In this document: positions 4,192 to 63,559 of the stretch, in pieces | Layout: each line of letters begins with the position of its first letter | Position numbering within the stretch: position 1 is the first letter of the stretch | Assembly: GCA_044892505.1 (NCBI GenBank) | Contig: CM097882.1 | Coordinates: forward strand, 203,174,001 to 203,238,000 | Origin: Schmidtea nova | Lineage: Eukaryota | DNA: 64,000 nt | Reading direction: 5' to 3' | Notes under the pieces: generated by a model | What the model saw: only the letters and a program-made list of their open reading frames with translations | The model's database searches: none | What the model was told of the DNA's origin: nothing | Position numbers and translations under genes: made by a program

Positions 4192-4211
4192 GATTACGAT
4201 TGCAAACAGAA

Positions 4212-4835: not shown

Positions 4836-4928
4836 ATTTAAAAATTATATTTTCTTAATATTATTGTTTATATTTGTTTTAAATACCTGTTCTCAAAGTA
4901 ATTATTTCATTTCAAAATATTTTCAGTA

Positions 4929-43560: not shown

Positions 43561-43646
<86 letters not shown>

Positions 43647-43881
43647 TTATAACCAAATAAAATAGTTCTGCCAAAAAGTTTACAACAAAATTAAAAAATC
43701 AATTTGAAAATAAAAATTATATTTCTAATATACATATCACAGAGTTTAAACCCAAATGGAATATCGAGTTCGTAAATTTCAGAAACTGGCTGTCAAGTTA
43801 TAATTATTTGATGTTCTGACGAGATTGTTAAAACTACAAATAATAATAATAATAATAATAAAAATAATAATAAAAATTTAC

Positions 43882-46800: not shown

Positions 46801-47972
46801 TGACGTAATTCATCGGGAGTGCTGCTATATTTTATAAGGGCCAATATCGAATAAAGAAAACAAAATTGATCGTCGTTATTTACATTAACTAGACAATTTT
46901 TCCTGATTAACGTTCTGGGGGTTTGAATATATTTGCGACCACTCAGTCTACTTATCTCAGAGTATTTTGTGACTATAAAACTAATATATTCAATTTTTCT
47001 GATGGTCCAATTACTCCCCTTTTCATTTATTTTACTTATTTTCTCGTTTAAAAGAGAGATACCCTCGTCAATGAAAGATTCGCTCCAAACACGAGCAGAG
47101 TTTGAGATGACGAAAGATTGAAGTTCATCATCTTTCTCAAACTCTACTTTAATACAAAATTGTATTTTCACCGATTTCATTTTACTTACAGTTTCAAATA
47201 ATTTATCAAGGAGAACGTCAGGAACAGAAAGAGTTTGACAATTCAAAGACGACACATCAAGCTTCACTATAACATGGGAGTTATTCAAGTCTGAAACTAT
47301 ATCAACTACGCCACAGCCTACTTGAACCGAAAAACAATTAAGAATTTGGGGTACTACCTCGCTAAGAATCTCGTCATCACTAATATTTACAATCTCATCA
47401 TCATCATCACTAACATTTACAACCTCGTTATCTACAAGAACCTCGTTATCTACAAGAACGTCGTTATCTACAAGAACGTCGTTATCTACCAGAACCTCAT
47501 TATCTACAAGAACATCGTTATCTACAAGAACCTCGTTATCTACAAGAACCTCGTCGTCGTCGTCACTTATTGTTATGATTTCGTCTATTTTATTCTTTTT
47601 TGTGGGAATATCAGTTGAAAAATCTGATTGTCTTTTACTACCTATTACATTTATTAACTTATTGATTGACTCTATCAATTGTTGGTTTTGTAATAAAATC
47701 TCATTCATTGTAGTATTGTTATTATTGTTGTCAATTTGCCTATTGGTTTCATGATTGGTTTCAATGTTAGTTGTTGTTGTTGTTGTTGTTGATGTAGTCA
47801 AAGCTTTTGAGTAAGCTGTATTAAAAATGGTTTTTTTAGAAGGCATATATTGAGTTAAATGAATATGGTGTTTATCATAGAAGTCAGTATATGTCGATGT
47901 TTCAAGATTTTGGCATACGGGGCATAACAGGTAAGTTATACAATTATATTTATAACGATAGTATTTTTCCAT
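43882..47972 (-). pseudogene. polB: Protein-primed family B DNA polymerase with one frameshift (about 45795) and one in-frame stop (44365-44367)
   Basis: YADFE, HNLKGYD, KFIDS, YIDINNLYG, KLLNNSLYGK, AGDTDS, LRPKCY motifs across three consecutive ORFs. Confidence 0.92.
47420..47555 (-). repeat. 18-bp coding tandem repeat (DNEVLV/DNDVLV)n in the pPolB N-terminal region
   Basis: Seen in DNA and in the translated ORF. Confidence 0.9.
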
Positions 47973-48514
47973 AATGACGTCACAGTCGTTATGGCAAATA
48001 CTATTGCAAAAAGTCGGATATTTATAACCTACATAACAAATTTAAATTTAAAATATATATCATTAATATTTTTAAATAAAAAATCTACATAATAATGTCT
48101 TAATATTTTTTAAAATATTTATTTCATAATTGTTTTTTCATCATAAAAAATAAATCAATAATATTATAATAAATATATTAATAATAATCTAAGTTTAACA
48201 TATTACTTAATAGTTTATGAAGACAAAACTATTATGTAATAGGTTAAAATTAATAGATATTTTATAAAGTCTGACAGTTGCTAATCAAATTTTGACATAT
48301 TACATAATAGTTTAAGAAGATAAACCTATTACGAAATATGTTAAAATTTAAAGGTTATTTATTTATCATATGGTATGTTAAAGTTGTTATTAAAATAATT
48401 TTTATCTTAAGATTATAATTATTATTATTATACCATGAGTTATATTAAAATAATCTATCATTATCAAATTAATATACAATATGTTGTATTAAAATAGTTT
48501 ATCTTTATCAAATT

Positions 48515-48703
48515 NNNNNNNNNNNNNNNNNNNNNNNNNNNNNNNNNNNNNNNNNNNNNNNNNNNNNNNNNNNNNNNNNNNNNNNNNNNNNNNNNNNNNN
48601 NNNNNNNNNNNNNNNNNNNNNNNNNNNNNNNNNNNNNNNNNNNNNNNNNNNNNNNNNNNNNNNNNNNNNNNNNNNNNNNNNNNNNNNNNNNNNNNNNNNN
48701 NNN
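48515..48703. other. Assembly gap (189 N)
   Basis: Direct reading. Confidence 1.
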
Positions 48704-48821
48704 ATTATTAAAAACTAATATTATTATTGAATATATTCATAGTTAATTGAGAATACTATTTAATTAAGGGAAAATATTAATAGTAAAATATTATAAAAAC
48801 ATTATAAAACATTATAAAACA

Positions 48822-49367
48822 TTATAAAAATTTAAAAATCTTACATTTTGTTCTACCATTCATCACGGAATTTATCGATGCATTATTTAAAAAATGTCCA
48901 GTATTTGAATCCTTATTAAAATTCATCGCGGATACACTTGAATTGTTATTAAAATTAAAATTCGTCGCGGATTCATTTGGGGCATTAAAAAGTTCTATAA
49001 AACATTAAATAAAATAATAAATATACAAATAAAATTTTACCGTTTCTATAAAAAACATTATTGTTTTCGTTTCCCGATACATTTCCCGATAGGTTTGGGA
49101 TATTAAATTCCATCGCCGATACATTTTTGGCATTTATATGTTCTATAAAACATGAAATAAAATAATAAATATACAAATATAATTTTACCGTTTCTAAAAG
49201 AAACATTATTGTTATTGTTTCCGGATACATTTGTAACATTTCGCATATTAATTCTTGACATTCCTATAATAAATTACGTTTAAAAATAATAAAATAAAAA
49301 TAAATAAATCCTTACCATTCAATCCATTAATGTTGGTATTTTTAACATTATTGATATTGTTGTACAT
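48822..49367 (-). CDS. Four-exon Asn-rich Polinton gene (exons 49367-49316, 49263-49189, 49142-49041, 48994-48822), 133 aa
   Basis: Three GT..AG introns (52, 46, 46 nt), all phase 1, internal exons 75 and 102 nt keep frame; not in ORF track as such. Confidence 0.7.
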
Positions 49368-49691
49368 ATTTAATAATTGATTATATGATGAATAAGAAAT
49401 TTTGGGTTATGGTAAAAAGTGACTAAAATATTGAAAACATATCTTTATATAAGATATATTGCATAATATTAATTGAACCAATGAAAATCGTTTATGAGAA
49501 GAAAAGAGTCGCTCGCATACATACAACATGGATTTACCAGCTGTGTGTGTATTATCATACACATATGTTATACATACAAGCTAACTCATTATAATTTCCA
49601 TTAATACACACATGATTACTCATGCACGATGACCGCAGAGATTATGCATTTCAATTGCAAATTTTTTATTTCAAATTAATTAAGCATATTA

Positions 49692-50111
49692 TTAATTTTT
49701 TAAATAATCTAAAGCCCCCACCAAACACCCTTTATATGCACAATTTGTATGATCTCGATATGGGCATGAAATATTGTCAGGAAAAGTTTCAACTTCCTTA
49801 ATATTATACTTAATTAATCTTAGGGACGGAAAATATCTTTTTAAAACAGTAAGTTTATCTTGATCAGTCACATAGAAAATCGCATCAACATCTTCAATTT
49901 CTTTCAAAATACATGTTGGACAAAAGTGGTCTTCCCCTTCATACCATTCTAATCTGTCATGTTCACCAATTCCAGCCCAAAAAGGAACATCATTATATAT
50001 CCAATATCTTGGTCGAAAAATATTATTAACATTCATAATACATAATTCTTTAATAATAATCCCTCCGCAATTATTATTATAACCATAAATATCAATAAAA
50101 TAACAAGTCAT
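49692..50111 (-). CDS. Polinton accessory protein resembling a DnaQ/DEDD exonuclease fold with C-terminal Cys/His motif
   Basis: FIDIYGY..IIKELC, LEWYEG, CPYRDHTNCA; fold assignment from memory of the family. Confidence 0.45.
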   Translation of the reverse strand: MTCYFIDIYGYNNNCGGIIIKELCIMNVNNIFRPRYWIYNDVPFWAGIGEHDRLEWYEGEDHFCPTCILKEIEDVDAIFYVTDQDKLTVLKRYFPSLRLIKYNIKEVETFPDNISCPYRDHTNCAYKGCLVGALDYLKN

Positions 50112-50141
50112 TTTTCTAAAACATTTATTAAACTACATTGT

Positions 50142-50525
50142 TTATACTTTTAACATTGAATTAAGCCATGCAAGACAATGTTGACCACAAGTAATTGTTA
50201 ATGGATGTTGATACCGAATTCGATTATATACAATCGGTTTACCCAATGTTTGAAGTTTACTAACTAATAAACCGGGGTAATAACATCCGAATGGATCGAA
50301 TGCATACACCTTGCTTGGTTTCACGTATACAGCAATCCAATGTTCTCCGCCTAGAGTAGATGATTGAGTATTGACGACTATGGCTTGGTTGACATCTAAA
50401 TAAGGGATTTTGTCTAGTGGATATACTCCAATAAATTCATTTCCCAATAAATGTTTTCCAATTCGATTAACCTGAATAGAACTATATAAATAGATTTATT
50501 TAATAAATAATAAAACTTACTCCAT
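50142..50525 (-). CDS. Adenain-like cysteine protease; exon 1 50525-50521, 39-nt intron, exon 2 50481-50142, 114 aa
   Basis: GEHWIA, FDPFG, Q..TITCGQHC catalytic motifs; splicing supplies ATG and gives MDSIQVNRIGKHLLGNEF. Confidence 0.85.
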
Positions 50526-50568
50526 GACAAATTGTTAAATCTTTGACTTGTACATTTATATTGATAGT

Positions 50569-51616
50569 TTAAACCAAAACTGTTCGATTAGCAGTAATTT
50601 GAATTTCATTTTCAAATACCCCATATATTATTACATGTACTGGTTCTTCAATAGCTTTAGCAAACTTTATATCTAATCTTAAATTTCCATTTTGAGGTAA
50701 TTGACTTTGATTTAAATCGAAATCCGGAGCCAAAACAAATGTAAAGAAAGGGTATTTATTTTTAAAATCGGCTAATGTTATACCACAATTCAAATTCTTA
50801 TCTAAATATCCCATATTTCTGACCATCGATTGCATATATGTAGTACAATAATTATCATTTTCGAAATCTTGAGTATATGTTTCTCGATAATCAGTGTTTT
50901 TCGATAAAGATAGAGAAGTTACATTGAAATGTTTGAATTTCGAACTTGATGCAGTATATGATCCATTGTATTGAGTTTCACTTTGAAATGAGACCAGAAT
51001 AAAATTTGGCATTCTTCGATCTCCGAATATTTGTTCCTTATAGAAAGATGATGCACCTTTACCAATAGCAAATTGTACTATTTCTTTGGTTTTCATTGGA
51101 TAAATAGCGTGTTTTGAGTTAAGTCCAACTTGATGTCCAGCTAATACAGATGGTTCAACACGAACGCGACGAATCATTAACTTTGCATCAACTAATTGAC
51201 ATTTTGGTGCACCGTTTTTTGAATAAAGTGATAGTGAAGAATCAGAACGCTTCAGTCTGATGTGAACATTGACACCTGGTAATAAATATTTCGGTTGATC
51301 CATGAAATCCAGTTGTAGAGATGAACACATTGTAAATAGCTTTGAACCTTTGATCCACGCTTTTCTCTCGTCAGAATCTCCATATCCCATTGGAGTAAGA
51401 CAAGTTTCTTTAGTATCACCATTATAATTTAAAATAGTTTCGATTATTGCCTTGTGTGCATATGTATTGTTTCCACCTTCAATTTTGATATTATTAAAAC
51501 CAAGAATCGCGTCCTTGAATAGAGTATGAAACATAAAATTGTTTGGTATAACATCATCAGTTGCAGACAAATCTTTTTTATCGGCATTTACAACTTTTAT
51601 TTGAACTGTTAGTAAA
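50569..51616 (-). pseudogene. Major capsid protein of Polinton B, C-terminal part
   Basis: Continuous with the N-terminal part at 59449-59774 once the insertion and 153-bp duplication are removed. Confidence 0.9.
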
Positions 51617-51658
51617 CTGTTAGTAAAGCCGATACCCAAAATTCTCTCAAATGATATT

Positions 51659-51985
51659 TCACAAACCATGAAATTGATCCTGCGTAAACCATTGAACAAT
51701 ATCAAAAGTACTAGATGAACCACATGGAAAATGACTCAAGGGATCCATAAATTGGCCCATTACTTTTAAACATTTCATTCTAACGTGAGAATATGTTGAG
51801 TTTAAATTTCGAACAATTTGCATTATTTGGAAATTGTTGATATCATTACATTTAGAAATTGAATTAATTTCTTTCAAAATTTCATATTTTTCAGGTGATA
51901 AAACATCGGTCATTGTGGTTGGACTTGCAAAATGATTGGTAAAAATGATATATTTTAATTTTTTACATTTGCATTTATTTTGCAT
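51659..51985 (-). pseudogene. Captured host gene 5' fragment in the LTR, tentatively tepsin (ENTH)-like
   Basis: EILKEINSISK..NLNSTYSHVRMKCLKVM resembles tepsin EEIAKISH..RLHSSSGHGKLKVLKIL from memory; duplicate at 58540-58866. Confidence 0.3.
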
Positions 51986-52163
51986 TGAATAACATTGATT
52001 TTTTTATTTTGACTGAGGGTTTGGTATTGTTCGAGGTTTGTTTTAATATTTCTCGTGGAATTTATATTTTGCTGCTAAAGTTTAAAAATTGTAAGAAACT
52101 TGTGAATATAGTTTAAAATAAATATTTTTTAAAAAGTGGACTACTAGTTTTTGATAATTTAAA

Positions 52164-52567
52164 ATGCGTTATTCTATTGTTAAAATTTTAATTGTCCTAC
52201 AAATTTTAACACTTCATATTTTGCAAATGTGTCACAGTAATATTGTTGGATGTGGTGGTTTCGTTAAAACAGATATCATTGGATTTGCTTATCATAAATT
52301 ATCAGCACAATTAATGTTTTCGGACGGAACTCTAAATTATGTGACTGATGTCCCTCCAAATGGAGCGCATTCTATTCCTATATATGATTTCGGTTTCTAT
52401 GTTACCAAAATTATGAGTCCTGACGGTTGGAATATTGAACCAACTGATGGCTACGTTATAAACATTAATAGCCAAGATTCTCGTCCAGATGACTATAATT
52501 TTCATTTCGCTGGTTTTACCGTACTTGGTAAAGTATCAACAGCTAATATTGAAACAGGTCCACTAAA
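52164..52567 (+). other. NOMO: Captured N-terminus of nodal modulator (NOMO) inside the LTR
   Basis: Signal peptide then IVGCGGFVK..GTLNYVTD..PN..IPIYDFG..GWNIEP..NFHFAGFTVLGKV..GP, matching the NOMO N-terminus; duplicate from 59045. Confidence 0.85.
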
Positions 52568-54929
52568 AATGGTGTCAGAGGAAAACCAATCTCCAATTCA
52601 AGATGGAAATCAAACATTTCGTCCCCAAGTCTCACAACATCCAGCAACAATGAATAATTCATTTCAATTAAACTCATCTAATTCTAATAATGCAAGTACG
52701 CTTAGTCAAATTGAAGTCGTTAAGCGAATTGCAGCTGCAATGCAACCACCACCACCTCCGATGCATTTAAGCAATCGACAAAATCAACCGTCAATTCCAA
52801 CCCCATTTCAAGTAAATCAAAACTCTCAAATTCCATTAGACTGTGCGCAATTGATAAGGATTCCAACCAGTTCACAAGACTCAGCTACTAACATTCGACA
52901 GGCTTCACATTTATTACAACAGAATTTAATCTTACAAAGTGATAAATTTAAGCAAGCTAACAATCATATATCAGATTCTAGCAACTCTACAGCCCCTAAT
53001 CAGTCTTTAATCGTCAACAATTCAACGAATAGTAGTCTGTCAGCAATAACAATAAGTTCACCTCCAGTCGCTCCACAGAATCAAAATTCTACAGTTCTTT
53101 CAATGATTAACGTCGACGTTCGAATATTAGAAGCGATAAATCGATCGATTTCTCAGCAGAATCCAAAACCAGTAAATTCAATGCCAGTAAATCCCAATTT
53201 TTCTCTTATTCAAACGGATCCCAAAGTCGCTCAACAATTGATTAATGACTTTCAAAAGCAGTTTCTTTGCATACCGCTAGGTGCTAAGCCACAGGGATAC
53301 AATTCAATTGGTCAAACATCGGAAGCAACACAAATCAACATGAAAAATTGCAATAACATCAAATCTATCGTAAATTTTTCACCAGCTCCATCGAATATGA
53401 ACTTAAACACCAACAACGATATCAATAATTCGCTATTAAAAGCTCCATCAAATTCAAAAGTCACAGGAACTCCAATATTAACAGATTTTCTTCTCTTTTC
53501 GGAACAGAAGATCAGCCCCCATTATCGCTGTGGAGTTACGTTAGCATATTTTATTATTATATTAAATTTCTATTATTATATATTATTATTATTTATATCA
53601 TTATTATTAAAATCATTATTATTAAAATTAACGGAGCCGCCCAATCTTCCGAATTTTAGTCTACGTCGCATATCCTATAGGTTTTTGTCAATATTCGTAA
53701 GGGTTTCCTCCGCCACATTTCACTTTAAACTAGCCCAGGACACGACTATATCAAAACTATCTACATTAATTTGCAAGCGCTTGTCGTACGAGGGACCGAC
53801 ATACATATCTTATAATGGCGCAATATTAAGGAATCAGGACTCACTTTTAAGTTCTGACATATGTTCGGATTCTTTGTTGTTCTGTCATGTACCATTGTAT
53901 GGCGGCGCACCATCAAGTATAGATGATGACAACGAATACGACGATAAAAAGCCCAAACCTTTGCCTAAAAAGCAAAGAAATGTTCGAGGCGCTGCTTCTT
54001 CCGACAGTAACTCTAGACAAAATATTAATTGTCCGTTCTTTTTAGATGAGAACCAATCACCATCAACTTGGTTACTCACACTCGAAGCCCTTTTAGAAAG
54101 TTGCGGCGTTACTTCTTCAAGAGATAAATTCTATAGAATATTATCTCTCATTCCACAGGAACATTTAGGCCGCCTTTCTGCCGTTATTCGCCGCACAACG
54201 CAAAAAACCTTTCTAACTCCTTTTGAGGAACTCAGCACAGGACTGCTGGATTTATTTAAAGTCCCCAAACAGGAAATATTCTCAAAATATTTCAAGGCCC
54301 AATCTTTAGGAAGTTGTAAGCCGACAGAATTTTTGCAGAAGGCTTTTACAGACCTCGAACAAATGCAAAATGGGACAGCACCCGACCAAAACATGCTACG
54401 CCAGTTCTTTTTAAGTGTACTTCCGACACACACACAACAGATACTTGCTTTATCGTCTCCGGTAGATATACACGAATTAGCAAAAATGGCGGACAAAATT
54501 CATGAAATTGTTCCGTTAGGTGGTACACCAGGCTCATCTGTCAATAGCCTTCCTATCGCAAGCCCGCCGATCCCATCATCAACAGAAAATGCTCTTCTTT
54601 GCGCCATTCGCGACCTTACTGATCGTATTTCGCATTTGGAACGTTACAAATCTCCGTCTCGAAATCCACCACCTTCCAATGCGTTTGACCGACGACGTTC
54701 CAAATCCCCGGCTTATTCAAACATTTGCTTTTATCATACCAAATATGGGACGAAAGCAAATTGTTGCAACATAGGATGTGGCTGGCGAAACAAAGCAGCT
54801 ACCCTCAAAATCATTGATAAGTGCATCTATCACGCACGATTTGGGGATAAAGCAAACAAATGCATTGTAGGTTGCAAATCCTACAATTCCCCACCATCTT
54901 CTCCAAACAACATTCAAAAAAACTTGTAA
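52164..54929 (+). CDS. gag: NOMO-linker-TM-ubiquitin-like-Gag fusion ORF, 921 aa
   Basis: Single open frame from the LTR through the PBS into Gag (WLLTLEALL, KPTEFL, LAKMADKI, two Cys/His boxes). Confidence 0.85.
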   Translation: MRYSIVKILIVLQILTLHILQMCHSNIVGCGGFVKTDIIGFAYHKLSAQLMFSDGTLNYVTDVPPNGAHSIPIYDFGFYVTKIMSPDGWNIEPTDGYVININSQDSRPDDYNFHFAGFTVLGKVSTANIETGPLKMVSEENQSPIQDGNQTFRPQVSQHPATMNNSFQLNSSNSNNASTLSQIEVVKRIAAAMQPPPPPMHLSNRQNQPSIPTPFQVNQNSQIPLDCAQLIRIPTSSQDSATNIRQASHLLQQNLILQSDKFKQANNHISDSSNSTAPNQSLIVNNSTNSSLSAITISSPPVAPQNQNSTVLSMINVDVRILEAINRSISQQNPKPVNSMPVNPNFSLIQTDPKVAQQLINDFQKQFLCIPLGAKPQGYNSIGQTSEATQINMKNCNNIKSIVNFSPAPSNMNLNTNNDINNSLLKAPSNSKVTGTPILTDFLLFSEQKISPHYRCGVTLAYFIIILNFYYYILLLFISLLLKSLLLKLTEPPNLPNFSLRRISYRFLSIFVRVSSATFHFKLAQDTTISKLSTLICKRLSYEGPTYISYNGAILRNQDSLLSSDICSDSLLFCHVPLYGGAPSSIDDDNEYDDKKPKPLPKKQRNVRGAASSDSNSRQNINCPFFLDENQSPSTWLLTLEALLESCGVTSSRDKFYRILSLIPQEHLGRLSAVIRRTTQKTFLTPFEELSTGLLDLFKVPKQEIFSKYFKAQSLGSCKPTEFLQKAFTDLEQMQNGTAPDQNMLRQFFLSVLPTHTQQILALSSPVDIHELAKMADKIHEIVPLGGTPGSSVNSLPIASPPIPSSTENALLCAIRDLTDRISHLERYKSPSRNPPPSNAFDRRRSKSPAYSNICFYHTKYGTKANCCNIGCGWRNKAATLKIIDKCIYHARFGDKANKCIVGCKSYNSPPSSPNNIQKNL
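52570..52579 (+). promoter_or_regulatory. Primer binding site TGGTGTCAGA (tRNA-Leu-like, partial)
   Basis: 2 nt after the 5' LTR end; matches the known TGGTGTCAGA-type PBS over 10 nt. Confidence 0.7.
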
Positions 54930-57900
54930 TGCCATCACTCGTTGCGGCTGAAGTTGATGGCAAATTACCTCCTGCACTCGATTTATTTCTAGTGAGAGCT
55001 GAATCCCCTTCTTTCAGCGTTTCTCCGAACTTTTGCAGTACTCTCGATTTTCTTGTTGACACAGGATCCAGCCTCTCCATTCTTCCTTTACAATATGAAT
55101 CTCTTTGCGATGATTCCGTTTATACCTTGAAAGCCGCCAACGGAACCATGGTAAATACACACGGTTCTTTTTCAGCAAATTTCGTTCTTCCTTCTTTAAA
55201 TCAATCTTTTATATGGAAGTTCTGTGTCGCTGACGTTATCCATCCCATTCTTGGCTCAGACTTTTTGAGTTCACACAATTTGTTGGTCGATTGTCGTTCA
55301 CGCCTTTTGAGAACACATTCGCACACAAATTCGTCTTTAGTCATTGACACAAAAAAACTCAACATTTTCAACTCATCTGACGTTTCTGTATCCACTGCCA
55401 TTCAACCCATTCATCCAAAAATTGCTACAGACATTTTAAATAAATACACATTTTCACAAACAATGCCTTTACGAAAACAAGTCTCTGTAACATCTTACTG
55501 CCATACTATCAACACCACAAACTCTCTTCCGGTACGTTGTAAAGTACGCCCTCTTTCGAACGAAAAACTAGATTTCGTTCGCTCCGAATTCGCTACGTTG
55601 TTGAACGAAGGCATTATAAAAAGATCTAAATCTCCATGGTCTTCACCACTTCATCTCGTACCAAAGAAAGACGGAACTTTCAGACCTTGTGGAGATTATC
55701 GTCGTTTAAATATGATTACGGTTCACGACTCATATTCTATGCCTTTAGTAAACGACATTTTGTACAGACTTACCGAGGCCAAAATATTTTCAACTATAGA
55801 CTTAGTTAAGGCCTATCACCAAATCCCAGTTAAAGAATCTGACGTGGAAAAAACCGCAGTTTTAACACCTATCGGACTCTTTGAGTACGTTTTCATGCCG
55901 TTTGGCCTTAGAAATTCCGCTCAAACCTTTCAAAGACACATCGACCATATTTTAATGGATTTACCATTCGCAATTCCTTATATTGACGATATCCTTATTG
56001 GTTCTAAGGATGCGGAAACACACAAAAAACATTTAGATGCAGTTCTTTGCGCACTTTCTTCCAATAACCTACAAATTAATTTAGATAAGTGCTTATTTTT
56101 TAAAGAAGAAGTCCGTTTTTTAGGTCACATCATCTCGGGTCAAGGCGTCAGTCCACCATCCGACAGACTAGATACTATATCTAAGTTTCCTCTCCCACAA
56201 ACTGTTACTCAACTTCGGAGTTTTCTGGGAACAGTAAACTATTGCCACCGTTTTATTCCTAAAATTTCAGAAATTCTTTCACCTCTTTCTGGTTACTGTT
56301 CTAAACCAAAGAAATCCATAATTCCTTGGAACGATACTTCGTTGCTCGCTTTTGAGCATGCCAAAACAGCCCTTTCAAACATACAGACTCTGCATTATCC
56401 ACGAGGAGATTTGCCATTACGTTTAACCACAGACGCATCAAACATAGCAATCGGTGCCGTTTTACACCAGATAAACGGTTACATCCCAGATCCACTAGAA
56501 TTTTACTCAAAGAAACTAACCTCACCACAACAAAAATATTCAGCTTTCGACCGCGAACTTCTCGCTATTTACCAGTCGGTTAAACATTTTAAGCATTTAC
56601 TCGAGGGCCGTCTTTTTAGCATCCATACAGACCACAAGCCACTTGTTTACTTGTTCTCAATGAAAGACCCTTCTCCGAGACAACAACGCCAGATTAGCTA
56701 TATTAGCGAATTTTCTTGCCAAATATACCACATCGCCGGCAGTGATAACATTATAGCTGATTGCCTTTCACGAAATGTAAACGCAATTATCCACTGTCCT
56801 TTATTTTCTATCGACGAACTCCAAAATAATCCTCCAGATGCCATTGATATTTCGAAATTTGGCGACAAACACATAATCAAAGACAAAATTCACTACGACT
56901 CATCTCTTCCTGGCACTCTTCGCCCAATCTTGAATGACTCCATGAGAAAACTGGCTTTTCTCTCTGTCCACAACACGCACCACCCAGGTTCCTCAGCCAC
57001 TTTTAATCTATTACACACGTGTGTAGTTTGGCCAAACATGAGACATGATGTTAAACTCTGGGTTGCACAATGCATAGGATGCCAACGTTTTAAGATAACT
57101 AAGCACACTAAACCTCCAATAATTCATTATCCCACTGGCAACCGTTTCGAAAACTTACACATTGACATCGTCGGCCCAGTCCCAAGTGACTGCGGTTTCT
57201 CTTACTTATTAACCATGATCGACCGCAAGACTCGTTGGTTCGAAGTCATTCCTTTACGCACCATTTCTTCTAACACTATCGCAACTTCGCTAATTCAAAA
57301 TTGGATTTCACGATATGGAGTTCCCAAGTCGATCATCAGTGATCGCGGAACACAGTTTGAATCTAACTTATTTCAAGCTTTGACCGCTAAACTTGGGATA
57401 CAACATCTTCGTACGACCACATATCATCCACAAACAAACGGGTTAGTCGAACGTTTCCATCGTACTTTAAAAGCTTCTCTTGGCATTCTTTCTGAACAAC
57501 AAGGTTGGACAAAGGTTTTACCTTTCGTATTATTAGGTTGGCGAAATACACCTTCTAGGACTACAGGATCATCACCCGCTCAATTACTTTTCGGTACAAA
57601 CACATCGTTACCCGGTCAACTTGTCGACTTTGATAACTCTCCTACTTTGGAAGATCTCGCGATTGCTAGAGACCATTTTTTATCAATCGACACTAATCCT
57701 GAATTCTCTTCCTCGACCACCTATAAACCTTACATTCCAAAAACATTCGAAAATGCATCACACGTCTATATTAGAAATATAACTGATGCAAGTTTAAAGC
57801 CAAGATATTCCGGACCTTACAAGCTCGTCGAGATTAAAGAAAACAACGCGAAAGTGATCGTTAACGACGCTACACAAACATTTAACCTCTGCCGTCTTAA

Positions 57901-58270
57901 ACCAGCTTTAGTTTTGCTCGATGATGAACCTCCACCTGACAATTTCTCGACCCAAACAGATATAATCTCGAACTCTCACACAAACGATAATGACCTTATC
58001 AATTCCACTGAGGACGATCTTTCCAACAACTCACCTTCATACCCGATTGTTCAAACATCAGACGCAGAAAACAAAACGACGGAAAAATCTGAATACATAC
58101 CGTTTATCCCAGAACCGAATGACGTACTTCGTTTACCACCCATTTTGAGGAAAGCAAAGCAAACACAAAATAAGCCAAAGTCCGTCACTTACAACAAATG
58201 GGTTCGTGTCCGTTCTATTAATCAAAAACCGGATTCACCAACTAGACTAATAAGAATCTATTCAAATTAA
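54860..58270 (+). CDS. pol: Gypsy Pol (protease, RT, RNase H, integrase)
   Basis: LVDTGS, YIDDIL, TTDAS, HHPG..C..C, HIDIVGP, SDRGTQFE, VERFHR; no stops. Confidence 0.95.
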   Translation: MHCRLQILQFPTIFSKQHSKKLVMPSLVAAEVDGKLPPALDLFLVRAESPSFSVSPNFCSTLDFLVDTGSSLSILPLQYESLCDDSVYTLKAANGTMVNTHGSFSANFVLPSLNQSFIWKFCVADVIHPILGSDFLSSHNLLVDCRSRLLRTHSHTNSSLVIDTKKLNIFNSSDVSVSTAIQPIHPKIATDILNKYTFSQTMPLRKQVSVTSYCHTINTTNSLPVRCKVRPLSNEKLDFVRSEFATLLNEGIIKRSKSPWSSPLHLVPKKDGTFRPCGDYRRLNMITVHDSYSMPLVNDILYRLTEAKIFSTIDLVKAYHQIPVKESDVEKTAVLTPIGLFEYVFMPFGLRNSAQTFQRHIDHILMDLPFAIPYIDDILIGSKDAETHKKHLDAVLCALSSNNLQINLDKCLFFKEEVRFLGHIISGQGVSPPSDRLDTISKFPLPQTVTQLRSFLGTVNYCHRFIPKISEILSPLSGYCSKPKKSIIPWNDTSLLAFEHAKTALSNIQTLHYPRGDLPLRLTTDASNIAIGAVLHQINGYIPDPLEFYSKKLTSPQQKYSAFDRELLAIYQSVKHFKHLLEGRLFSIHTDHKPLVYLFSMKDPSPRQQRQISYISEFSCQIYHIAGSDNIIADCLSRNVNAIIHCPLFSIDELQNNPPDAIDISKFGDKHIIKDKIHYDSSLPGTLRPILNDSMRKLAFLSVHNTHHPGSSATFNLLHTCVVWPNMRHDVKLWVAQCIGCQRFKITKHTKPPIIHYPTGNRFENLHIDIVGPVPSDCGFSYLLTMIDRKTRWFEVIPLRTISSNTIATSLIQNWISRYGVPKSIISDRGTQFESNLFQALTAKLGIQHLRTTTYHPQTNGLVERFHRTLKASLGILSEQQGWTKVLPFVLLGWRNTPSRTTGSSPAQLLFGTNTSLPGQLVDFDNSPTLEDLAIARDHFLSIDTNPEFSSSTTYKPYIPKTFENASHVYIRNITDASLKPRYSGPYKLVEIKENNAKVIVNDATQTFNLCRLKPALVLLDDEPPPDNFSTQTDIISNSHTNDNDLINSTEDDLSNNSPSYPIVQTSDAENKTTEKSEYIPFIPEPNDVLRLPPILRKAKQTQNKPKSVTYNKWVRVRSINQKPDSPTRLIRIYSN
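54917..54962 (+). promoter_or_regulatory. -1 programmed ribosomal frameshift signal
   Basis: A AAA AAC heptamer 54917-54923, 6-nt spacer, stem TGCCATCA/TGATGGCA; pol is in the -1 frame. Confidence 0.8.
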
Positions 58271-58492
58271 TTGCACCACTGTCCACCAAGTTCTATTAGT
58301 TTTTTTTTTTTTTTTTCGGTTTCCTAAATTTCTTTCGCAATTCTTTCTCAGGTTATTCCATGTCATTCACGACTCTTTCCAAATACTTTCTGGACACTAC
58401 AAAATACCATATTATTATATAATAAACTACTATATTACGTATCTACATTATAGTATTTCAAAATGTACTCCGCATCTTCCGATGGGGGCTGA

Positions 58493-59448
58493 TGTAGTGG
58501 TCTAGAAAGCCGATACCCAAAATTCTCTCAAATGATATTTCACAAACCATGAAATTGATCCTGCGTAAACCATTGAACAATATCAAAAGTACTAGATGAA
58601 CCACATGGAAAATGACTCAAGGGATCCATAAATTGGCCCATTACTTTTAAACATTTCATTCTAACGTGAGAATATGTTGAGTTTAAATTTCGAACAATTT
58701 GCATTATTTGGAAATTGTTGATATCATTACATTTAGAAATTGAATTAATTTCTTTCAAAATTTCATATTTTTCAGGTGATAAAACATCGGTCATTGTGGT
58801 TGGACTTGCAAAATGATTGGTAAAAATGATATATTTTAATTTTTTACATTTGCATTTATTTTGCATTGAATAACATTGATTTTTTTATTTTGACTGAGGG
58901 TTTGGTATTGTTCGAGGTTTGTTTTAATATTTCTCGTGGAATTTATATTTTGCTGCTAAAGTTTAAAAATTGTAAGAAACTTGTGAATATAGTTTAAAAT
59001 AAATATTTTTTAAAAAGTGGACTACTAGTTTTTGATAATTTAAAATGCGTTATTCTATTGTTAAAATTTTAATTGTCCTACAAATTTTAACACTTCATAT
59101 TTTGCAAATGTGTCACAGTAATATTGTTGGATGTGGTGGTTTCGTTAAAACAGATATCATTGGATTTGCTTATCATAAATTATCAGCACAATTAATGTTT
59201 TCGGACGGAACTCTAAATTATGTGACTGATGTCCCTCCAAATGGAGCGCATTCTATTCCTATATATGATTTCGGTTTCTATGTTACCAAAATTATGAGTC
59301 CTGACGGTTGGAATATTGAACCAACTGATGGCTACGTTATAAACATTAATAGCCAAGATTCTCGTCCAGATGACTATAATTTTCATTTCGCTGGTTTTAC
59401 CGTACTTGGTAAAGTATCAACAGCTAATATTGAAACAGGTCCACTAAA
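58493..59448 (+). repeat. 3' LTR, 956 bp, termini TGTAGTGG...CCACTAAA
   Basis: Follows GATGGGGGCTGA; terminal inverted repeat with CA changed to AA. Confidence 0.92.
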
Positions 59449-59774
59449 GTATTGTTTCCACCTTCAATTTTGATATTATTAAAACCAAGAATCGCGTCCT
59501 TGAATAGAGTATGAAACATAAAATTGTTTGGTATAACATCATCAGTTGCAGACAAATCTTTTTTATCGGCATTTACAACTTTTATTTGAACTGTTAGTAA
59601 AGTATCATTCAAATCCAAATATTCAGATTGAGATCCGTTAATGTAAAATGCCACATCATTTCTACTGTCTGTAATAGAATTCATGGGAAATACTTCTTCA
59701 AATGCACCATATTCAATGACTGCTTGAGGAGATGGTCGGTCGAAAAGACATAATTCAGATTTACCACAAATCAT
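59449..59774 (-). pseudogene. Major capsid protein of Polinton B, N-terminal part
   Basis: MICGKSELCLFDRPSPQ as in A; runs into the 3' LTR after GGNNT. Confidence 0.9.
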
Positions 59775-60169
59775 TTTGCAAATATAGTTCCATGTCCTTT
59801 CATTCGATTGTTTATATACCTTCGATGCTTTTTACGTCTAGGTCCCACTTGTTCAGGTTCAGGTTCAGGTTCAGGTTCATCATTATTAAACATACTTGCA
59901 ACATTAGGAATCATACTACTCACGGTAGGCAAGACTTTACCAATTGCAGACAAAGCATTTGTTTTCAATGATGGTAATATTTTCTGATCATTCATGATGA
60001 CATCTTTGGCAGTTTTTAAACCAAAACTACCGATTCTCTTTAGAATTGGGAGTGCAAATCGCCCTATAGTTTTTAACCAACCTGATCCATACTGTTTACC
60101 GGCAAAATAAGGTAATTCACCACCAGTTTGGCTATTACTATACAATAAAATTATATCTGGATTAATCAT
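59771..60169 (-). CDS. Small virion protein, homolog of 1185-1568
   Basis: QTGGELPYF, QYGSGWLKTIGRFALPIL, MKGHG conserved. Confidence 0.75.
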   Translation of the reverse strand: MINPDIILLYSNSQTGGELPYFAGKQYGSGWLKTIGRFALPILKRIGSFGLKTAKDVIMNDQKILPSLKTNALSAIGKVLPTVSSMIPNVASMFNNDEPEPEPEPEQVGPRRKKHRRYINNRMKGHGTIFAK

Positions 60170-61208
60170 TTAATTTACGAAAATGTAATGTCAAATGTGT
60201 TTTTGAATCTTTTGGAAAATTTATTAATTTACCACTATCGTCACGGATATTTATTTCTATATTGTTTATACATGAGGTAGAAATAGGTAAATACATTGGA
60301 TTATCCATTACTATTTGTACAACTTCATCCTGTTCATATTTGTCGATCCATACAGATTTCAGTAGAGGAACCAGAGAATCACCGACAATTATTGGTTCGA
60401 TAATGTTACTGTAAATGAACATTTGTTGATGATGATTAAATAATTTGGCTTTGCGAATTCCTTTAACTTCTCTATCTTGATATTTTTCATATTTTAATCC
60501 AAGTGTATTGATTAGTTTTTGATCAAATATAACTTCTTTAACTTCATCTTTCAGTTTAAATTTGAATACATTGTCAATAATTTCAACACCTTTAAATATA
60601 TGAGAACAGAAAAATGTCAAATAATTATATAAATCTTCAACTTTTGTCATGTATATTTCGTCTTGGAATTCATAAAGTAAATCTGTTTCTAAATCATAAC
60701 TTATTGATATATGCATTTTCTCTGATGAATAATCAGAAGGAAAAAGCATTTTATAAGTTGAATTGTTGCTAATGATTTTTAATTCATTAAACCCAAATTT
60801 ATTCGCATCTTCTATATTTTCAAACTTAAAATAAAATGGTGTTATATCACAATTTATATGTAAATATATTTTATCTAGATGTAATTCAACTTTATCATTC
60901 AAATATTGAGTATCTTCATAATTAGTTTGAACTTTAAAGTAGTCATTTACAGTTTCAGTTGTCACTGTCGTGTAGTAAATTTTGCATTGGCTGTAATAAG
61001 GAAATTTGTTATATACAAATGTGAAATCTTGCAATGCAACTTCCCAATTACCACGTAAATAAATTGGATTTTGTAAATTGATCATGAATTTACTAGCTTG
61101 ATTATCTGGATGAATTAATGGGCAACTATTACTTGGTAAAATCATATAAAAGTTCATTTTACTAGATCTTTGGCTGATATCCATGATGGGTTTTGATATC
61201 CATGCCAT
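60162..61208 (-). CDS. Minor capsid (penton) protein, intact
   Basis: 348 aa; position between integrase and MCP block; LPSNSC, WEVAL, IEINIRDD motifs. Confidence 0.8.
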   Translation of the reverse strand: MAWISKPIMDISQRSSKMNFYMILPSNSCPLIHPDNQASKFMINLQNPIYLRGNWEVALQDFTFVYNKFPYYSQCKIYYTTVTTETVNDYFKVQTNYEDTQYLNDKVELHLDKIYLHINCDITPFYFKFENIEDANKFGFNELKIISNNSTYKMLFPSDYSSEKMHISISYDLETDLLYEFQDEIYMTKVEDLYNYLTFFCSHIFKGVEIIDNVFKFKLKDEVKEVIFDQKLINTLGLKYEKYQDREVKGIRKAKLFNHHQQMFIYSNIIEPIIVGDSLVPLLKSVWIDKYEQDEVVQIVMDNPMYLPISTSCINNIEINIRDDSGKLINFPKDSKTHLTLHFRKLND

Positions 61209-62220
61209 TTGACATAATATTGTTTATCTTTACCCACTATTTTAGTTTTTAAAATTTTTTCAATTCTAAATACTGTTAGTGGGGGAATAACTTGCAATTC
61301 TTGCTCGTAAAATTTACCACTAACTACATTATTTTCAGAATCAGAAATAACATACATGACAGGATCTTGGCTAGTATTAATTTTTGAGATCTGAAATACC
61401 TCATCACTCCAATTACTATCAAAATTCTTGATGAATGGTGAAGCAGATATTTTACTAATCCTAACATGATCACCAACTTTATATTTAGGTTTTTTCATTT
61501 TCGATTTTTCTTTGCGAGATAATAAAATCTTTGCTGTATTTTTTATTGAAACATCAACTGGTCTCATTCCCTTTAATCCTATATGCGGTGAATGATTATA
61601 ACTATGAATAATCTTTGGTAAAACATTAATGTATGTTTTATTCCCTTGATGCACAAAATACTTTTTCAATTTTTCTCTTAATGTACGATTAAATCTTTCA
61701 ACATGCGCTGCTTTGAATTGTGAAAATACCGAGTAATGATTTATTCCCTTTAAAATTTCTTTAACTTTGCTATTGTAAAATTCTTTACCTAAATTAAAAA
61801 TTAAATTTAATTTAATTAATTAATTTTCTTACCTAAATCAGTTTGTAAGTTTTTCGGCTGCCCATCAGCAAACAATGTTTTGATTGCCACTGCCATTTCA
61901 TTAGCAGATTTAGTTTTGGTAGGAATAGCACGAGCAAATCTACTGAAAACATCGATACATGTTAAGATATACTTATATCCCTTGTTAATATTCGAATAGG
62001 GAATCATTTCCATCAAATCCATTTGCCACAAGTCATTAATACCATATGTTTTATATGCTCTTGTTGGAAATCGTTTCAATGCTGGTTTGTTTAGACTGTA
62101 TGCCAGTTGCCCCGATAACCATTTTTGAGTCTCTTTTTTCGAGTTTGGGACTTTTTTCTTTAGCTTTTCGACTCCACCGAAACCGGCGGGATCTTTTGGG
62201 TTCGTCCAAATCTTCTCCAT
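61154..62220 (-). CDS. Chromo-integrase; exons 62220-61833 and 61788-61154, 340 aa
   Basis: 44-nt GTAAG..TTTAG intron 61832-61789; splicing restores LQTDLGKEFYN. Confidence 0.9.
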
Positions 62221-62284
62221 TACAACAAGTAGATTTAAAATTCAATGTAAGATTAGCTAAATAACTCAAAGGAGTTTGTCCCAT
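62051..62284 (-). CDS. Overprinted MGQ/CC ORF, homolog of 3448-3669
   Basis: Same frame relationship to the integrase. Confidence 0.6.
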   Translation of the reverse strand: MGQTPLSYLANLTLNFKSTCCNGEDLDEPKRSRRFRWSRKAKEKSPKLEKRDSKMVIGATGIQSKQTSIETISNKSI

Positions 62285-62287
62285 TGT

Positions 62288-62824
62288 TTATGTTTGTTGT
62301 CCTAATAAACCAACTCCTCCTAACAAAGATAATGCTAATGGTAATAATGCAGCAATAAATCCTCCTTGTTGTTTATATATGATTTTGCGCATTTGTTTCC
62401 GACTTTTAGTATTTACAAGTGATAACAATGGTTTCTTGTGTTTGTTTAGAACTTTTTTATTTGATTTACTTATATTAATTTTACCTTTGACGATTTTAAC
62501 TATAACATCAAGTAAATCATCAATAACATAATTTGGAAACGATTGTAAAATACTAATTCTTTTAATACTAGGTGCCTTAAGTAATGCATTGAAAAATGGG
62601 AAACTACGATGATTTGATGTTTTTATTTCATTTTCAATTTTTTCTAAAGATTCTTTTGGTTTCAGATTATGTGAAATAAGATTCTTTGCAGGAATATTTT
62701 CAGTAATAAGTTTCTTCGGTGACGTGTAACTAGTCTTTGGTGGTACTTTAGTTTAACGTTTCTTTTTAAAAACTTTTTTAATTTTAGGCGACTTTAATAT
62801 CTTTGTGCGTGATTTTAAAAACAT
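62288..62824 (-). pseudogene. Basic pX-like protein, homolog of 3673-4191, with one in-frame stop (62753-62755)
   Basis: Manual translation: MFLKSRTK..KKR*..HRSFPFFNALLKAPS..KQQGGFIAALLPLALSLLGG. Confidence 0.75.
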
Positions 62825-62844
62825 TATTGATGTAATTTATTATT

Positions 62845-63468: not shown

Positions 63469-63559
63469 TTAATATATTAAAGAAATTGTTATTGTTTATA
63501 TTTGTTTTAATTAATTGTTCTACACGAATAAAAAATATTTAAATTTTATTACATCATAA

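What the first reader, a model, noticed from the sequence alone, without database searches (positions are those of the whole stretch)
52164..54929. Signal peptide - lumenal domain - TM - ubiquitin-like GG - Gag: a candidate membrane-tethered, DUB-released Gag
Seen: one 921-codon frame contains, in order, the NOMO signal peptide and domain, a Q/N/S/P-rich linker with many NxS/T sequons, and a hydrophobic run (VTLAYFIIILNFYYYILLLFISLLL) followed by basic residues. Next comes a 74-aa segment aligning to ubiquitin (SIFVR..DTTISKL..YNGAIL..L..SDI..S.L..VPLYGG, 53685-53906), then Gag from residue 582. There is no Met between about residue 412 and mid-Gag, so Gag cannot start alone without splicing or a non-AUG start. 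Known: ubiquitin fusions are cut after GG by cytosolic proteases, and pestiviruses use captured ubiquitin as a processing signal. Inference: type I topology puts Ubl-Gag(-Pol) on the cytosolic face of the ER, where cleavage frees Gag. This would be an ER-localised assembly route I do not know from Gypsy elements.
Basis: partly seen in the sequence, partly recalled or inferred. Interest (0 to 1): 0.92.

Follow-up and report, generated by a model that had tools for sequence, protein, structure and literature searches.

The report
Ubiquitin-like domain fused before retrotransposon Gag
A jumping gene of the Gypsy type carries a ubiquitin-like domain ending in Gly-Gly right in front of its capsid protein (Gag), a design shared by at least 36 distant relatives, which probably lets host enzymes cut Gag free from whatever is translated upstream; the signal peptide and "membrane anchor" in this copy are borrowed host DNA and a simple repeat, not a family feature.

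Summary
The pieces have different origins.

- **Signal peptide and NOMO domain:** these lie in a 943-nt host-derived segment. It is 100% identical on both sides of the element and forms almost the whole LTR.
- **Q/N-rich "linker":** a second host-derived coding piece, 60% identical to a free-standing ORF in another contig.
- **"TM" run:** the translation of a TAT/TTA microsatellite. It is not conserved in relatives.
- **Ubl-GG-Gag:** this part is solid.
  - The family profile hits ubiquitin at E about 1e-11.
  - AlphaFold gives a beta-grasp with pLDDT above 90.
  - GG is invariant in 27 of 27 aligned and 36 of 36 HMM-detected relatives, and is never followed by Pro.
  - dN/dS for the Ubl is 0.25.
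- **Upstream sequence:** hypervariable, and it includes other host fragments in the same ORF: histone H2A, 5'-nucleotidase and SCC3-like. A WWE ORF lies upstream in another copy.

Best reading: a Ty3/Gypsy clade uses a ubiquitin-derived module as a host-protease cleavage signal. This defines the Gag N-terminus and tolerates translated leaders and captured host 5' ends. Cleavage itself is inferred, not shown. The ER-tether model is copy-specific and weakly supported. I found no published description.

The parts
51464..51616 (.). Left copy of a 153-nt duplicated target segment (part of a Maverick/Polinton ORF on the minus strand)
   Evidence: 100% identical to 59449-59601. The paralogous Maverick at window 229-3395 has this stretch only once.
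51625..52569 (+). 5' LTR-like repeat. It is almost entirely host-derived DNA (upstream region plus the NOMO 5' coding sequence). The last ~9 nt resemble the family's native U5 end.
   Evidence: 943 nt are 100% identical to 58506-59448. It ends directly at the PBS. The CAC[TA]AAAA end is shared with L004 and L002. It lacks the ~15 nt of native LTR start that precede the 3' copy.
51659..51985 (-). Small 108-aa ORF inside the repeat, divergent from the NOMO start. Possibly a neighbouring host gene carried along.
   Evidence: ORF list. No significant Pfam hit.
52164..52567 (+). Truncated NOMO-like 5' coding fragment: hydrophobic N-terminus plus the first beta-sandwich domain, 135 codons
   Evidence: Pfam NOMO1-like_1st, E 1.2e-12, residues 32-105. 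No further NOMO sequence in the window. A duplicate lies at 59045-59448.
52570..52581 (+). Primer-binding site (PBS), read through by ORF1
   Evidence: TGGTGTCAGA occurs once in the window (0.06 expected) and directly after the LTR in L002, L004 (twice), L005 and L006. Eleven of the 12 positions are invariant across the 6 aligned sequences; the eleventh is A or G.
52569..54929 (+). ORF1 counted from the ATG that overlaps the PBS (786 codons): leader - Ubl - Gag. No internal stops.
   Evidence: Same frame and the same PBS-encoded residues as L004.
52602..53492 (+). Q/N/S-rich leader piece derived from a host-type gene
   Evidence: 60% identity over 91% of the query to P0163 (E 5e-77). P0163 is encoded in L009 at 429-1496 with its own ATG, an AT-rich upstream region and no PBS.
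53547..53628 (+).
   Evidence: Tandem Repeats Finder: period 3, 26.7 copies; period 15, 3.8 copies. Similar simple sequence at 43560-43880.
53682..53906 (+). Ubiquitin-like domain (beta-grasp) ending in Gly-Gly (53901-53906)
   Evidence: Pfam ubiquitin, E 0.004. Family profile against PDB ubiquitin, E ~1e-11. AlphaFold pLDDT 90-97 with a beta-beta-alpha-beta-beta layout. Foldseek top 50 hits are all Ubl, SUMO, ISG15 or ubiquitin, target-normalised TM-score up to 0.88. GG invariant in 27/27.
53907..54032 (+). Disordered acidic/basic linker between GG and the Gag core
   Evidence: AlphaFold pLDDT below 50 for residues 92-128 of the model. Variable length in relatives.
54033..54875 (+). Gag: helical core (DUF7041 type) and two Cys/His knuckles
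   Evidence: Pfam DUF7041. Helices at high confidence, and nearly invariant C/H/C/C columns. 2575 homologues at E<=1e-3.
54915..54921 (+). A_AAA_AAC slippery heptamer for the -1 frameshift into pol
   Evidence: Sequence read directly. ORF2 is in the -1 frame. A C-terminal ...KN is shared by most relatives.
54860..58270 (+). pol ORF (1136 codons, no internal stops): protease (DTG at residue 67), RT, RNase H, integrase
   Evidence: Pfam RVT_1, RT_RNaseH, Integrase_H2C2, rve. DTG motif.
58481..58505 (+). Polypurine tract and the first ~15 nt of the native LTR
   Evidence: The same GGGGGC-T(R)-TGT(R)GTG motif precedes the LTR in L002, L003, L006 and L008.
58506..59448 (+). 3' copy of the host-derived LTR body, including a duplicate truncated NOMO start (ORF 59045-59473)
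   Evidence: 100% identical to 51625-52567. It ends 2 nt short of the PBS-adjacent end of the 5' copy.
59449..59601 (.). Right copy of the 153-nt duplicated target segment

Best explanation
The region is a young Ty3/Gypsy LTR retrotransposon, with gag and pol intact as reading frames, inserted into a Maverick/Polinton.

It belongs to a clade whose first ORF starts at or upstream of the primer-binding site, so the leader is translated. A ubiquitin-derived domain with an invariant C-terminal Gly-Gly sits 15-45 residues before the Gag core. The most likely mechanism is that host ubiquitin-type C-terminal hydrolases cut after GG, as they do in natural ubiquitin fusion proteins. That cut would release Gag (and Gag-Pol after the -1 frameshift) with a defined N-terminus and discard whatever was translated upstream.

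Because the upstream part is disposable, it evolves freely and has repeatedly taken up host coding sequence. In this copy that means a NOMO 5' end with its upstream region, which now makes up nearly the whole LTR, plus a Q/N-rich host-type gene piece in the leader. The signal-peptide / TM appearance is a by-product of that mosaic and a microsatellite.

Shown: the architecture, the fold, its conservation, purifying selection, and hypervariability upstream.
Inferred: cleavage after GG, the enzyme responsible, which ATG is used, and promoter activity of the captured host DNA.
For: - **Element identity:** pol has RT, RNase H and integrase domains and a DTG protease motif. PBS and PPT are shared with relatives. 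There is an A_AAA_AAC slippery site. The terminal repeats are 943 nt and 100% identical.
- **Ubl fold:** the profile of 27 clade members hits ubiquitin chains over their full length at E ~1e-11 per single ubiquitin. 8 of 27 members hit Pfam ubiquitin on their own, the best at 3.7e-23. The AlphaFold beta-grasp has pLDDT 90-97, and all of the top 50 Foldseek PDB hits are ubiquitin-like folds.
- **GG and tail:**
  - GG is one of only six invariant columns in the alignment.
  - A local Ubl HMM finds the domain in 36 distinct representatives (all under 50% identical to each other). All 36 end in GG, and 11 of them were not used to build the HMM.
  - The residue after GG is never Pro (0 of 37).
  - Counting the last Gly as position 0 (the first is -1), -3 is L/I in 26/27 and -4 is R/K in 21/27.
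- **Selection:** dN/dS is 0.25 for the Ubl and 0.14 for Gag in a 91.6%-identical pair.
- **Upstream is disposable:**
  - That same pair shares nothing upstream, and homology starts at the first Ubl codons.
  - N-terminal extensions range from 0 to ~860 residues.
  - In-frame host-type domains include histone H2A, 5'-nucleotidase and SCC3 HEAT. A WWE ORF lies between the LTR and Ubl-gag in L003.
  - In L006 and L008, H2A lies between the LTR start and the PBS, mirroring NOMO here.
- **After GG:** the linker is predicted to be disordered.
- **No own start:** Gag has no Met of its own.
Against: - No direct evidence of cleavage.
- The window's Ubl is only 14-28% identical to the other clade Ubls, and alone it is below Pfam's cut-off. 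Its tail has Pro where most relatives have Arg/Lys at -4. Recognition by a ubiquitin-specific hydrolase is therefore uncertain.
- The N-termini of metagenomic proteins come from automatic gene calling of longest ORFs, which inflates apparent extensions.
- The left end of this copy is not a canonical integrase junction. About 15 nt of LTR start are absent and there is a 153-nt target duplication instead of 4-6 bp. So this copy may have arrived by an aberrant route, or the assembly may be wrong there.
- The host organism is unidentified.
Confidence: 0.65

Rival explanations
1. One reading: translation starts at the NOMO ATG and the signal peptide directs the chain into the ER. The NOMO domain and the glycosylated linker are lumenal. 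The hydrophobic run stops transfer, and Ubl-Gag(-Pol) is released from the cytosolic face by a deubiquitinase. This would give an ER-localised assembly route.
For: All parts are in one frame. The hydrophobic run scores 2.45 and is followed by basic residues. Sequons are enriched about 2-fold. Both LTR copies carry the NOMO start at 100% identity, which suggests this configuration is recent and was copied as a unit.
Against: - The SP and NOMO piece is a truncated host fragment in the LTR. A relative has a nuclear histone in the same slot.
- The hydrophobic run is a translated microsatellite.
- Only 8 of 27 clade members have any comparable stretch, at no fixed position.
- An in-frame ATG at the PBS, shared with L004, could be the start if transcription begins downstream of the NOMO ATG.
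- The signal peptide was not tested with a predictor.
Confidence: 0.1
2. The Ubl is not cleaved. It stays on Gag as a stable N-terminal ubiquitin-like domain that recruits host ubiquitin-binding machinery (sorting or proteasome-shuttle factors), and GG is kept for structural or binding reasons.
For: The Ubl bodies diverge fast (24-38% identity where Gag cores are 59-71%), which is unlike substrates of ubiquitin-specific enzymes. The best structural matches include non-cleaved Ubl domains of ubiquilin and parkin type.
Against: - Integral, non-cleaved Ubl domains generally do not keep a terminal GG (established knowledge). Here GG is invariant in 36 of 36 and the tail positions are conserved.
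- Extensions of up to ~860 unrelated residues, or a histone, on the N-terminus of an assembling capsid protein are hard to reconcile with function.
Confidence: 0.12
3. The long frame is not a functional unit. This copy is a rearranged, non-canonical insertion or a misassembly. Its upstream frame is open only because the captured pieces were recently coding. Gag is made, if at all, from a spliced or internally initiated message.
For: Non-canonical left junction and a 153-nt duplication. A mosaic of two host-derived pieces and a microsatellite. No exact match of ORF1 or pol in the public gene index.
Against: - Both ORFs are free of stops, and the LTR-like repeats are identical.
- The frame is continuous from the PBS to the Ubl in every relative where the PBS was recognised: L002, L004 (twice), L005 and L006.
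- There is no Met near the Gag start.
- This rival concerns only the present copy. It does not touch the clade-wide Ubl-GG-Gag design.
Confidence: 0.13

Closest known systems
Natural ubiquitin fusion precursors (ubiquitin-eS31/S27a, ubiquitin-eL40, polyubiquitin)
   Same: A ubiquitin fold ending in GG is joined directly to a downstream protein. The family profile matches these PDB chains over the whole ubiquitin moiety. The residue after GG is never Pro.
   Different: The downstream partner is a retrotransposon Gag. The Ubl is usually not at the N-terminus and is highly diverged. Cleavage is not shown.
Cytopathic pestiviruses with inserted host ubiquitin or ubiquitin-like sequences used as a processing signal (established knowledge, not tested here)
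   Same: A captured host ubiquitin-type module placed in a polyprotein so that a host hydrolase creates the N-terminus of the next protein.
   Different: Those are sporadic recombinants of an RNA virus. Here the module is a fixed, ancient, clade-wide part of a retrotransposon gag ORF, and it diverges fast.
Gene capture and extra domains in LTR retrotransposons (bdelloid rotifer elements, PMC5408684; orchid Ty3/Gypsy with a demethylase domain, PMC9289625; planarian Burro, PMC6431247)
   Same: Host-type coding sequence taken into an LTR element and kept in or next to ORF1.
   Different: None of those reports, as far as the searched text shows, describes a ubiquitin-like separator before Gag, or LTR bodies replaced by a host gene's 5' end.
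DUF7041-type Gag of Ty3/Gypsy elements with Cys/His knuckles
   Same: The Gag core and knuckles are homologous.
   Different: About three quarters of the 150 best Gag homologues start at the Gag core and have no Ubl.
Ddi1-type proteins (Ubl plus retropepsin-like domain; established knowledge, not tested here)
   Same: A ubiquitin-like domain combined with a retroelement-derived domain in one chain.
   Different: The partner there is a protease rather than Gag, it is a host gene, and the Ubl is not a GG-terminated cleavage module. No such hit came back from any search.

Membership tests
Ty3/Gypsy LTR retrotransposon | pol with protease, RT, RNase H and integrase in that order | tested here: met
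   Pfam RVT_1 267-425, RT_RNaseH 490-618, Integrase_H2C2 and rve 692-874. DTG at residue 67.
Ty3/Gypsy LTR retrotransposon | Gag with a nucleic-acid-binding knuckle, and gag-pol joined by a frameshift | tested here: met
   Two conserved C/H/C/C motifs. A_AAA_AAC and a -1 frame.
Ty3/Gypsy LTR retrotransposon | Long terminal direct repeats with a PBS after the left one and a PPT before the right one | tested here: met
   943-nt repeats at 100% identity. PBS and PPT are shared with relatives. The repeat body is host-derived, and complementarity of the PBS to a tRNA could not be checked because the window contains no tRNA.
Ty3/Gypsy LTR retrotransposon | Short (4-6 bp) target-site duplication and complete LTR ends | tested here: not met
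   153-nt target duplication. The left repeat lacks the ~15-nt native start seen at the right repeat, and there is a short templated filler at the left junction.
Ubiquitin family (beta-grasp) | Sequence-profile match to ubiquitin | tested here: met
   The window alone scores 17 bits against a cut-off of 25.4. The clade profile against PDB ubiquitin gives E ~1e-11 over the full length.
Ubiquitin family (beta-grasp) | Beta-grasp fold | tested here: met
   AlphaFold pLDDT 90-97. Foldseek probability 1.00, target-normalised TM-score 0.7-0.88, rmsd 1.2-2 A.
Ubiquitin family (beta-grasp) | C-terminal Gly-Gly | tested here: met
   27/27 aligned and 36/36 HMM hits.
Hydrolase-processed ubiquitin fusion | Cleavage after GG by a host enzyme | not testable with these tools
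   Only indirect evidence: the conserved tail, no Pro after GG, a disordered linker, and disposable upstream sequence.
NOMO / BOS-complex subunit | Full array of beta-sandwich domains and a C-terminal membrane anchor | tested here: not met
   Only the first domain is present (135 codons). No other NOMO sequence is in the window and the fragment is duplicated with the repeat. It is a fragment, not the gene.
Type I membrane protein | Cleavable signal peptide plus a stop-transfer segment, conserved among relatives | tested here: inconclusive
   A hydrophobic N-terminus was seen but no predictor was run. The stop-transfer candidate scores 2.45 but is a microsatellite translation, and comparable stretches occur in only 8 of 27 relatives.

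The most novel reading that the evidence does not exclude
A clade of Ty3/Gypsy retrotransposons has domesticated ubiquitin as a universal 'cut here' module in front of Gag. Because host hydrolases would trim off anything upstream, these elements can translate their leader. They can also swap the interior of their LTRs for host promoters together with the host start codon and 5' coding sequence (NOMO here, histone H2A in a relative), and carry host gene fragments as in-frame cargo. This would be a modular promoter-and-ATG piracy strategy not described for LTR elements.
Probability: 0.45. Interest if true: 0.85.

Novelty: new variant of a known kind. Interest (0 to 1): 0.78.

Why it matters
- Retroelement Gag N-termini are normally set by the start codon or by the element's own protease. 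A conserved host-ubiquitin-type module in that role would be a new way for a retroelement to use the host ubiquitin system.
- It would explain how these elements tolerate long translated leaders and repeated capture of host coding sequence.
- It shows LTR bodies being replaced by host gene 5' regions while keeping only the terminal few bases.
- The clade (at least 36 representatives under 50% identical to each other) gives a natural series of very divergent GG-terminated ubiquitin-like domains. That series is useful for asking what a hydrolase minimally needs to recognise.
- For annotation: such ORFs will be miscalled as host-gene fusions (NOMO, histone, nucleotidase).

Tried and rejected
- **Exact look-ups:** no record in the public gene index for ORF1, pol or a neighbouring host-type ORF. 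The source genome and organism stay unidentified.
- **Metagenome scans:** The search for related loci with the alignment had no usable conserved stretch. With the single protein it found nothing.
- **RNA searches:** no tRNA in the window to test the PBS against. No Rfam family in 50-61 kb.
- **Literature:** six searches found no description of a Ubl before Gag in an LTR retrotransposon. The only 'ubiquitin' passages read concerned SUMO sites in errantivirus Gag and ubiquitination-related motifs in planarian Burro.
- **Splice reading rejected:** I first read the end of the NOMO piece as exon 1 plus a splice donor, and a minus-strand 'intron' at the repeat boundary. I dropped this once self-comparison showed that the flanks are one Maverick ORF interrupted by the insertion.
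- **LTR-less reading rejected:** I considered that the element lacks LTRs. The PPT, native LTR start and PBS line up with relatives.
- **Splice acceptor at the Ubl start:** considered as an explanation for the sharp homology boundary in L010/L007. The sequences give no clear acceptor.
- **L004 tandem copies:** these differ only in the leader, so they gave no information on selection on the Ubl.
Full report
**1. Observation**

The frame 52164-54929 is open for 921 codons and overlaps a 1136-codon pol frame (54860-58270) in the -1 frame.
- In ORF1, Pfam finds NOMO1-like_1st (residues 32-105, E 1.2e-12). It also finds ubiquitin (510-576, E 0.005, below the curated cut-off but covering 1-69 of 72 profile positions) and the Gag domain DUF7041.
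- In pol, Pfam finds RT, RNase H and integrase.
- The Met gap (none between 412 and 734), the sequon excess (15 against 7.6 +/- 2.4) and the hydrophobic run followed by basic residues are all as described.
- The upstream frame is not open by chance. There are 0 stops in 326 leader codons against 22-25 in the other frames, and 0 of 5000 shuffles were open.

**2. What the pieces are**

*The terminal repeats.* Self-comparison shows a 943-nt segment present twice at 100% identity (51625-52567 and 58506-59448). It is flanked by a 153-nt segment that is also present twice at 100% (51464-51616 and 59449-59601).
- The outer flanks are collinear with a second copy of the same mobile element at window 229-3395, which has the 153-nt stretch only once.
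- That element is a Maverick/Polinton. It has a protein-primed PolB at 44365-47972, an A32-type ATPase at 62845-63468, and an integrase with a chromodomain in the other copy.
- So the retroelement is an insertion into a Maverick ORF.
- The 943-nt repeat holds the NOMO start (ATG at 52164 and again at 59045), about 540 nt upstream of it, and a divergent 108-codon ORF. No other NOMO sequence is in the window.

*Relatives fix the landmarks.*
- In L002, L003, L006 and L008 the polypurine tract and LTR start read GGGGGC-T(R)-TGT(R)GTG. The window has this at 58484-58500, only ~15 nt before the right repeat.
- TGTCAGA preceded by TGG, that is TGGTGTCAGA, directly follows the LTR in L002, L004 (twice), L005 and L006. 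In the window it occurs once, at 52570, two bases after the left repeat (0.06 expected by chance).
- The last ~9 nt of the repeat (CACTAAAAA) resemble the native U5 end of L004 and L002.
- The repeats are therefore LTRs that keep only their outermost native bases. Their interior is host-type DNA.
- The right repeat ends 2 nt short of the PBS-adjacent end of the left one, as expected after end processing (inference).
- The left end is not canonical: the ~15-nt native start is absent, a short templated filler is present, and the target duplication is 153 nt.
- I cannot tell an aberrant insertion from an assembly error without reads.

*The leader.* In L004 the first ORF reads through the PBS in the same frame, and an ATG overlaps the PBS in both L004 and the window. 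The native start of the window's ORF1 may therefore be 52569 (786 codons).
- The Q/N/S-rich 'linker' (52602-53492) is 60% identical over 91% of its length to P0163. P0163 is a 355-residue ORF in another contig (L009) with its own ATG, an AT-rich upstream region and no PBS. It is a second host-type coding fragment.
- The 'TM' is the translation of a TAT/TTA microsatellite at 53547-53628.

**3. The Ubl-GG-Gag core**

An exhaustive HMMER search with the Ubl-Gag part (432 residues) found 2575 homologues, 27 of them at E<=1e-30. In nearly all close ones, a ~70-residue segment ending in GG lies 15-45 residues before the Gag core.

*Conservation of GG and the tail.*
- In an alignment of the window and 26 relatives, the two glycines are among only six invariant columns.
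- Counting the last Gly as position 0 (the first is -1), -3 is L/I in 26/27 and -4 is R/K in 21/27.
- The next residue is never Pro.
- A local HMM of the segment detects it in 36 distinct representatives (clusters at 50% identity). 11 of these were not used in training, and all 36 end in GG at the last model position.
- About three quarters of the 150 best Gag homologues lack the segment and start at the Gag core. The Ubl is therefore a derived trait of one clade.

*Homology and fold.*
- The clade profile matches ubiquitin chains in the PDB over their whole length at E ~1e-11 per unit.
- 8 of 27 members hit Pfam ubiquitin individually (best 3.7e-23), and P0114 hits at 1.1e-22.
- With the window's segment alone, the four PDB hits are all Ubl domains, though none is individually significant.
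- AlphaFold on the alignment gives a beta-beta-alpha-beta-beta unit at pLDDT 90-97, then a disordered stretch (residues 92-128), then a confident helical Gag core and two knuckles.
- The Foldseek top 50 PDB hits are all ubiquitin-like folds, with target-normalised TM-score up to 0.88.

*Selection and rate.*
- In a pair of elements 91.6% identical in DNA, dN/dS is 0.25 for the Ubl and 0.14 for the rest.
- The Ubl body evolves much faster than Gag. Ubl identity is 24-38% where Gag cores are 59-71% identical.
- One member of that subgroup (P0020) has a near-canonical ubiquitin, 15-25% identical to its sisters' Ubls. This suggests replacement or very unequal rates.

**4. Upstream is disposable and collects host sequence**

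- The extensions before the Ubl range from 0 to about 860 residues.
- P0011 and P0013 are 91% identical from the first Ubl codons to the end. Their 820-870 upstream codons are unrelated, and the DNA homology starts at the same nucleotide in both.
- In-frame host-type domains upstream of the Ubl are histone H2A (P0008), cytosolic 5'-nucleotidase (P0001, one continuous ORF in L001) and SCC3/SA HEAT (P0013).
- In L003, a 437-codon ORF with a WWE domain lies between the 5' LTR and Ubl-gag.
- In L006 the order is pol end, PPT, LTR start, histone H2A ATG, PBS, leader, Ubl, Gag. Everything from the H2A ATG onward is one 701-codon ORF. L008, from another sample, is 98.9% identical over this stretch, but there ORF1 is split by one break. 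This mirrors the NOMO arrangement in the window.
- A hydrophobic stretch of TM strength upstream of the Ubl occurs in 8 of 27 members with no fixed position. That is consistent with translation of AT-rich leader sequence rather than a conserved anchor.

**5. Mechanism**

The best-supported reading is that the ubiquitin-derived module is a cleavage signal for host ubiquitin-type C-terminal hydrolases. It would free Gag and Gag-Pol from the translated leader.

Grounds for the inference:
- the invariant GG and conserved tail;
- the absence of Pro after GG;
- the disordered linker that follows;
- purifying selection on the Ubl;
- the lack of a Met for Gag;
- upstream sequences that would be incompatible with capsid assembly if retained.

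Not shown: cleavage, the enzyme, the start codon used, and whether the captured host DNA in the LTR acts as promoter. No hydrolase domain of that kind was found in the element itself.

It has no support in relatives.

**6. Comparison and novelty**

The design works like natural ubiquitin fusion precursors, and like pestivirus recombinants that use inserted host ubiquitin as a processing signal (the latter from established knowledge). It is a member of Ty3/Gypsy by its pol, Gag, PBS and PPT, with a non-canonical insertion junction.

Gene capture by LTR elements is known (PMC5408684, PMC9289625, PMC6431247). Six full-text searches found no description of a ubiquitin-like separator before Gag, nor of LTR interiors replaced by a host gene's 5' end.

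I rate it a new variant of a known kind, of high interest. The interest lies in the clade-wide Ubl-GG-Gag design rather than in the ER model.

- Gag and pol of the window's element have no breaks.

Noticed in passing
window 1-5400 and 44000-64000: Two copies (75-78% identical) of a Maverick/Polinton. It carries a protein-primed PolB fused to or adjacent to an endonuclease VII-like region, an A32-type ATPase, and an integrase with a chromodomain. The retroelement sits inside an ORF of the second copy. L002 shows the same kind of PolB next to a related retroelement.
   Followed up: partly
L004 1-10324; L006 1-1700; L008: Related elements occur as head-to-tail tandems that share one LTR. In L004 there are two full copies, 5076 nt apart, whose ORF1 products are 99% identical while the first 300 nt of the unit are 95% identical. 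In L006 and L008 the end of one pol is followed by PPT, LTR and PBS of the next copy. This may point to recombination between LTRs or to insertion of concatemers.
   Followed up: partly
L003 411-1724: A 437-codon ORF with a WWE domain lies between the 5' LTR and the Ubl-gag ORF. From memory only, it resembles HECT ligases of the ubiquitin-fusion-degradation pathway. A ubiquitin-pathway fragment captured next to a ubiquitin-fused Gag is a curious coincidence.
   Followed up: partly
L010 2797 / L007 2693: Two elements 91.6% identical downstream lose all similarity at exactly the same nucleotide, the first codons of the Ubl. Upstream, each has over 800 open codons of unrelated sequence. What creates such a sharp junction is unexplained.
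   Followed up: partly
window 51604-51627: An 11-nt unit (end of the target segment) is repeated 2.2 times at the left junction of the insertion. This looks like a templated filler of the kind left by microhomology-mediated repair.
   Followed up: no
window 10300-12400 (and 13999-14373): Remains of a different Gypsy-type pol (26-35% identical to the element's pol), in pieces.
   Followed up: no
window 23098-23925: ORF with an IS1595/ISXO2-like DDE transposase domain (E 2.7e-14). In eukaryotes this fits a Merlin-type DNA transposon.
   Followed up: no
window 48515-48703: A run of 189 N, flanked by AT-rich short tandem repeats (48790-49232). Left as it is.
   Followed up: no
window 54915-54929 and the C-termini in alignment A1: Most clade members end ORF1 with ...K-N just before the stop. 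This matches a conserved A_AAA_AAC -1 slippery site a few bases before the gag stop.
   Followed up: partly
window 51659-51985 (minus strand) and 58540-58866: A complete 108-codon ORF with no known domain lies inside the host-derived LTR body, divergent from the NOMO start. It suggests that a bidirectional host promoter region was captured as genomic DNA, not as cDNA.
   Followed up: no
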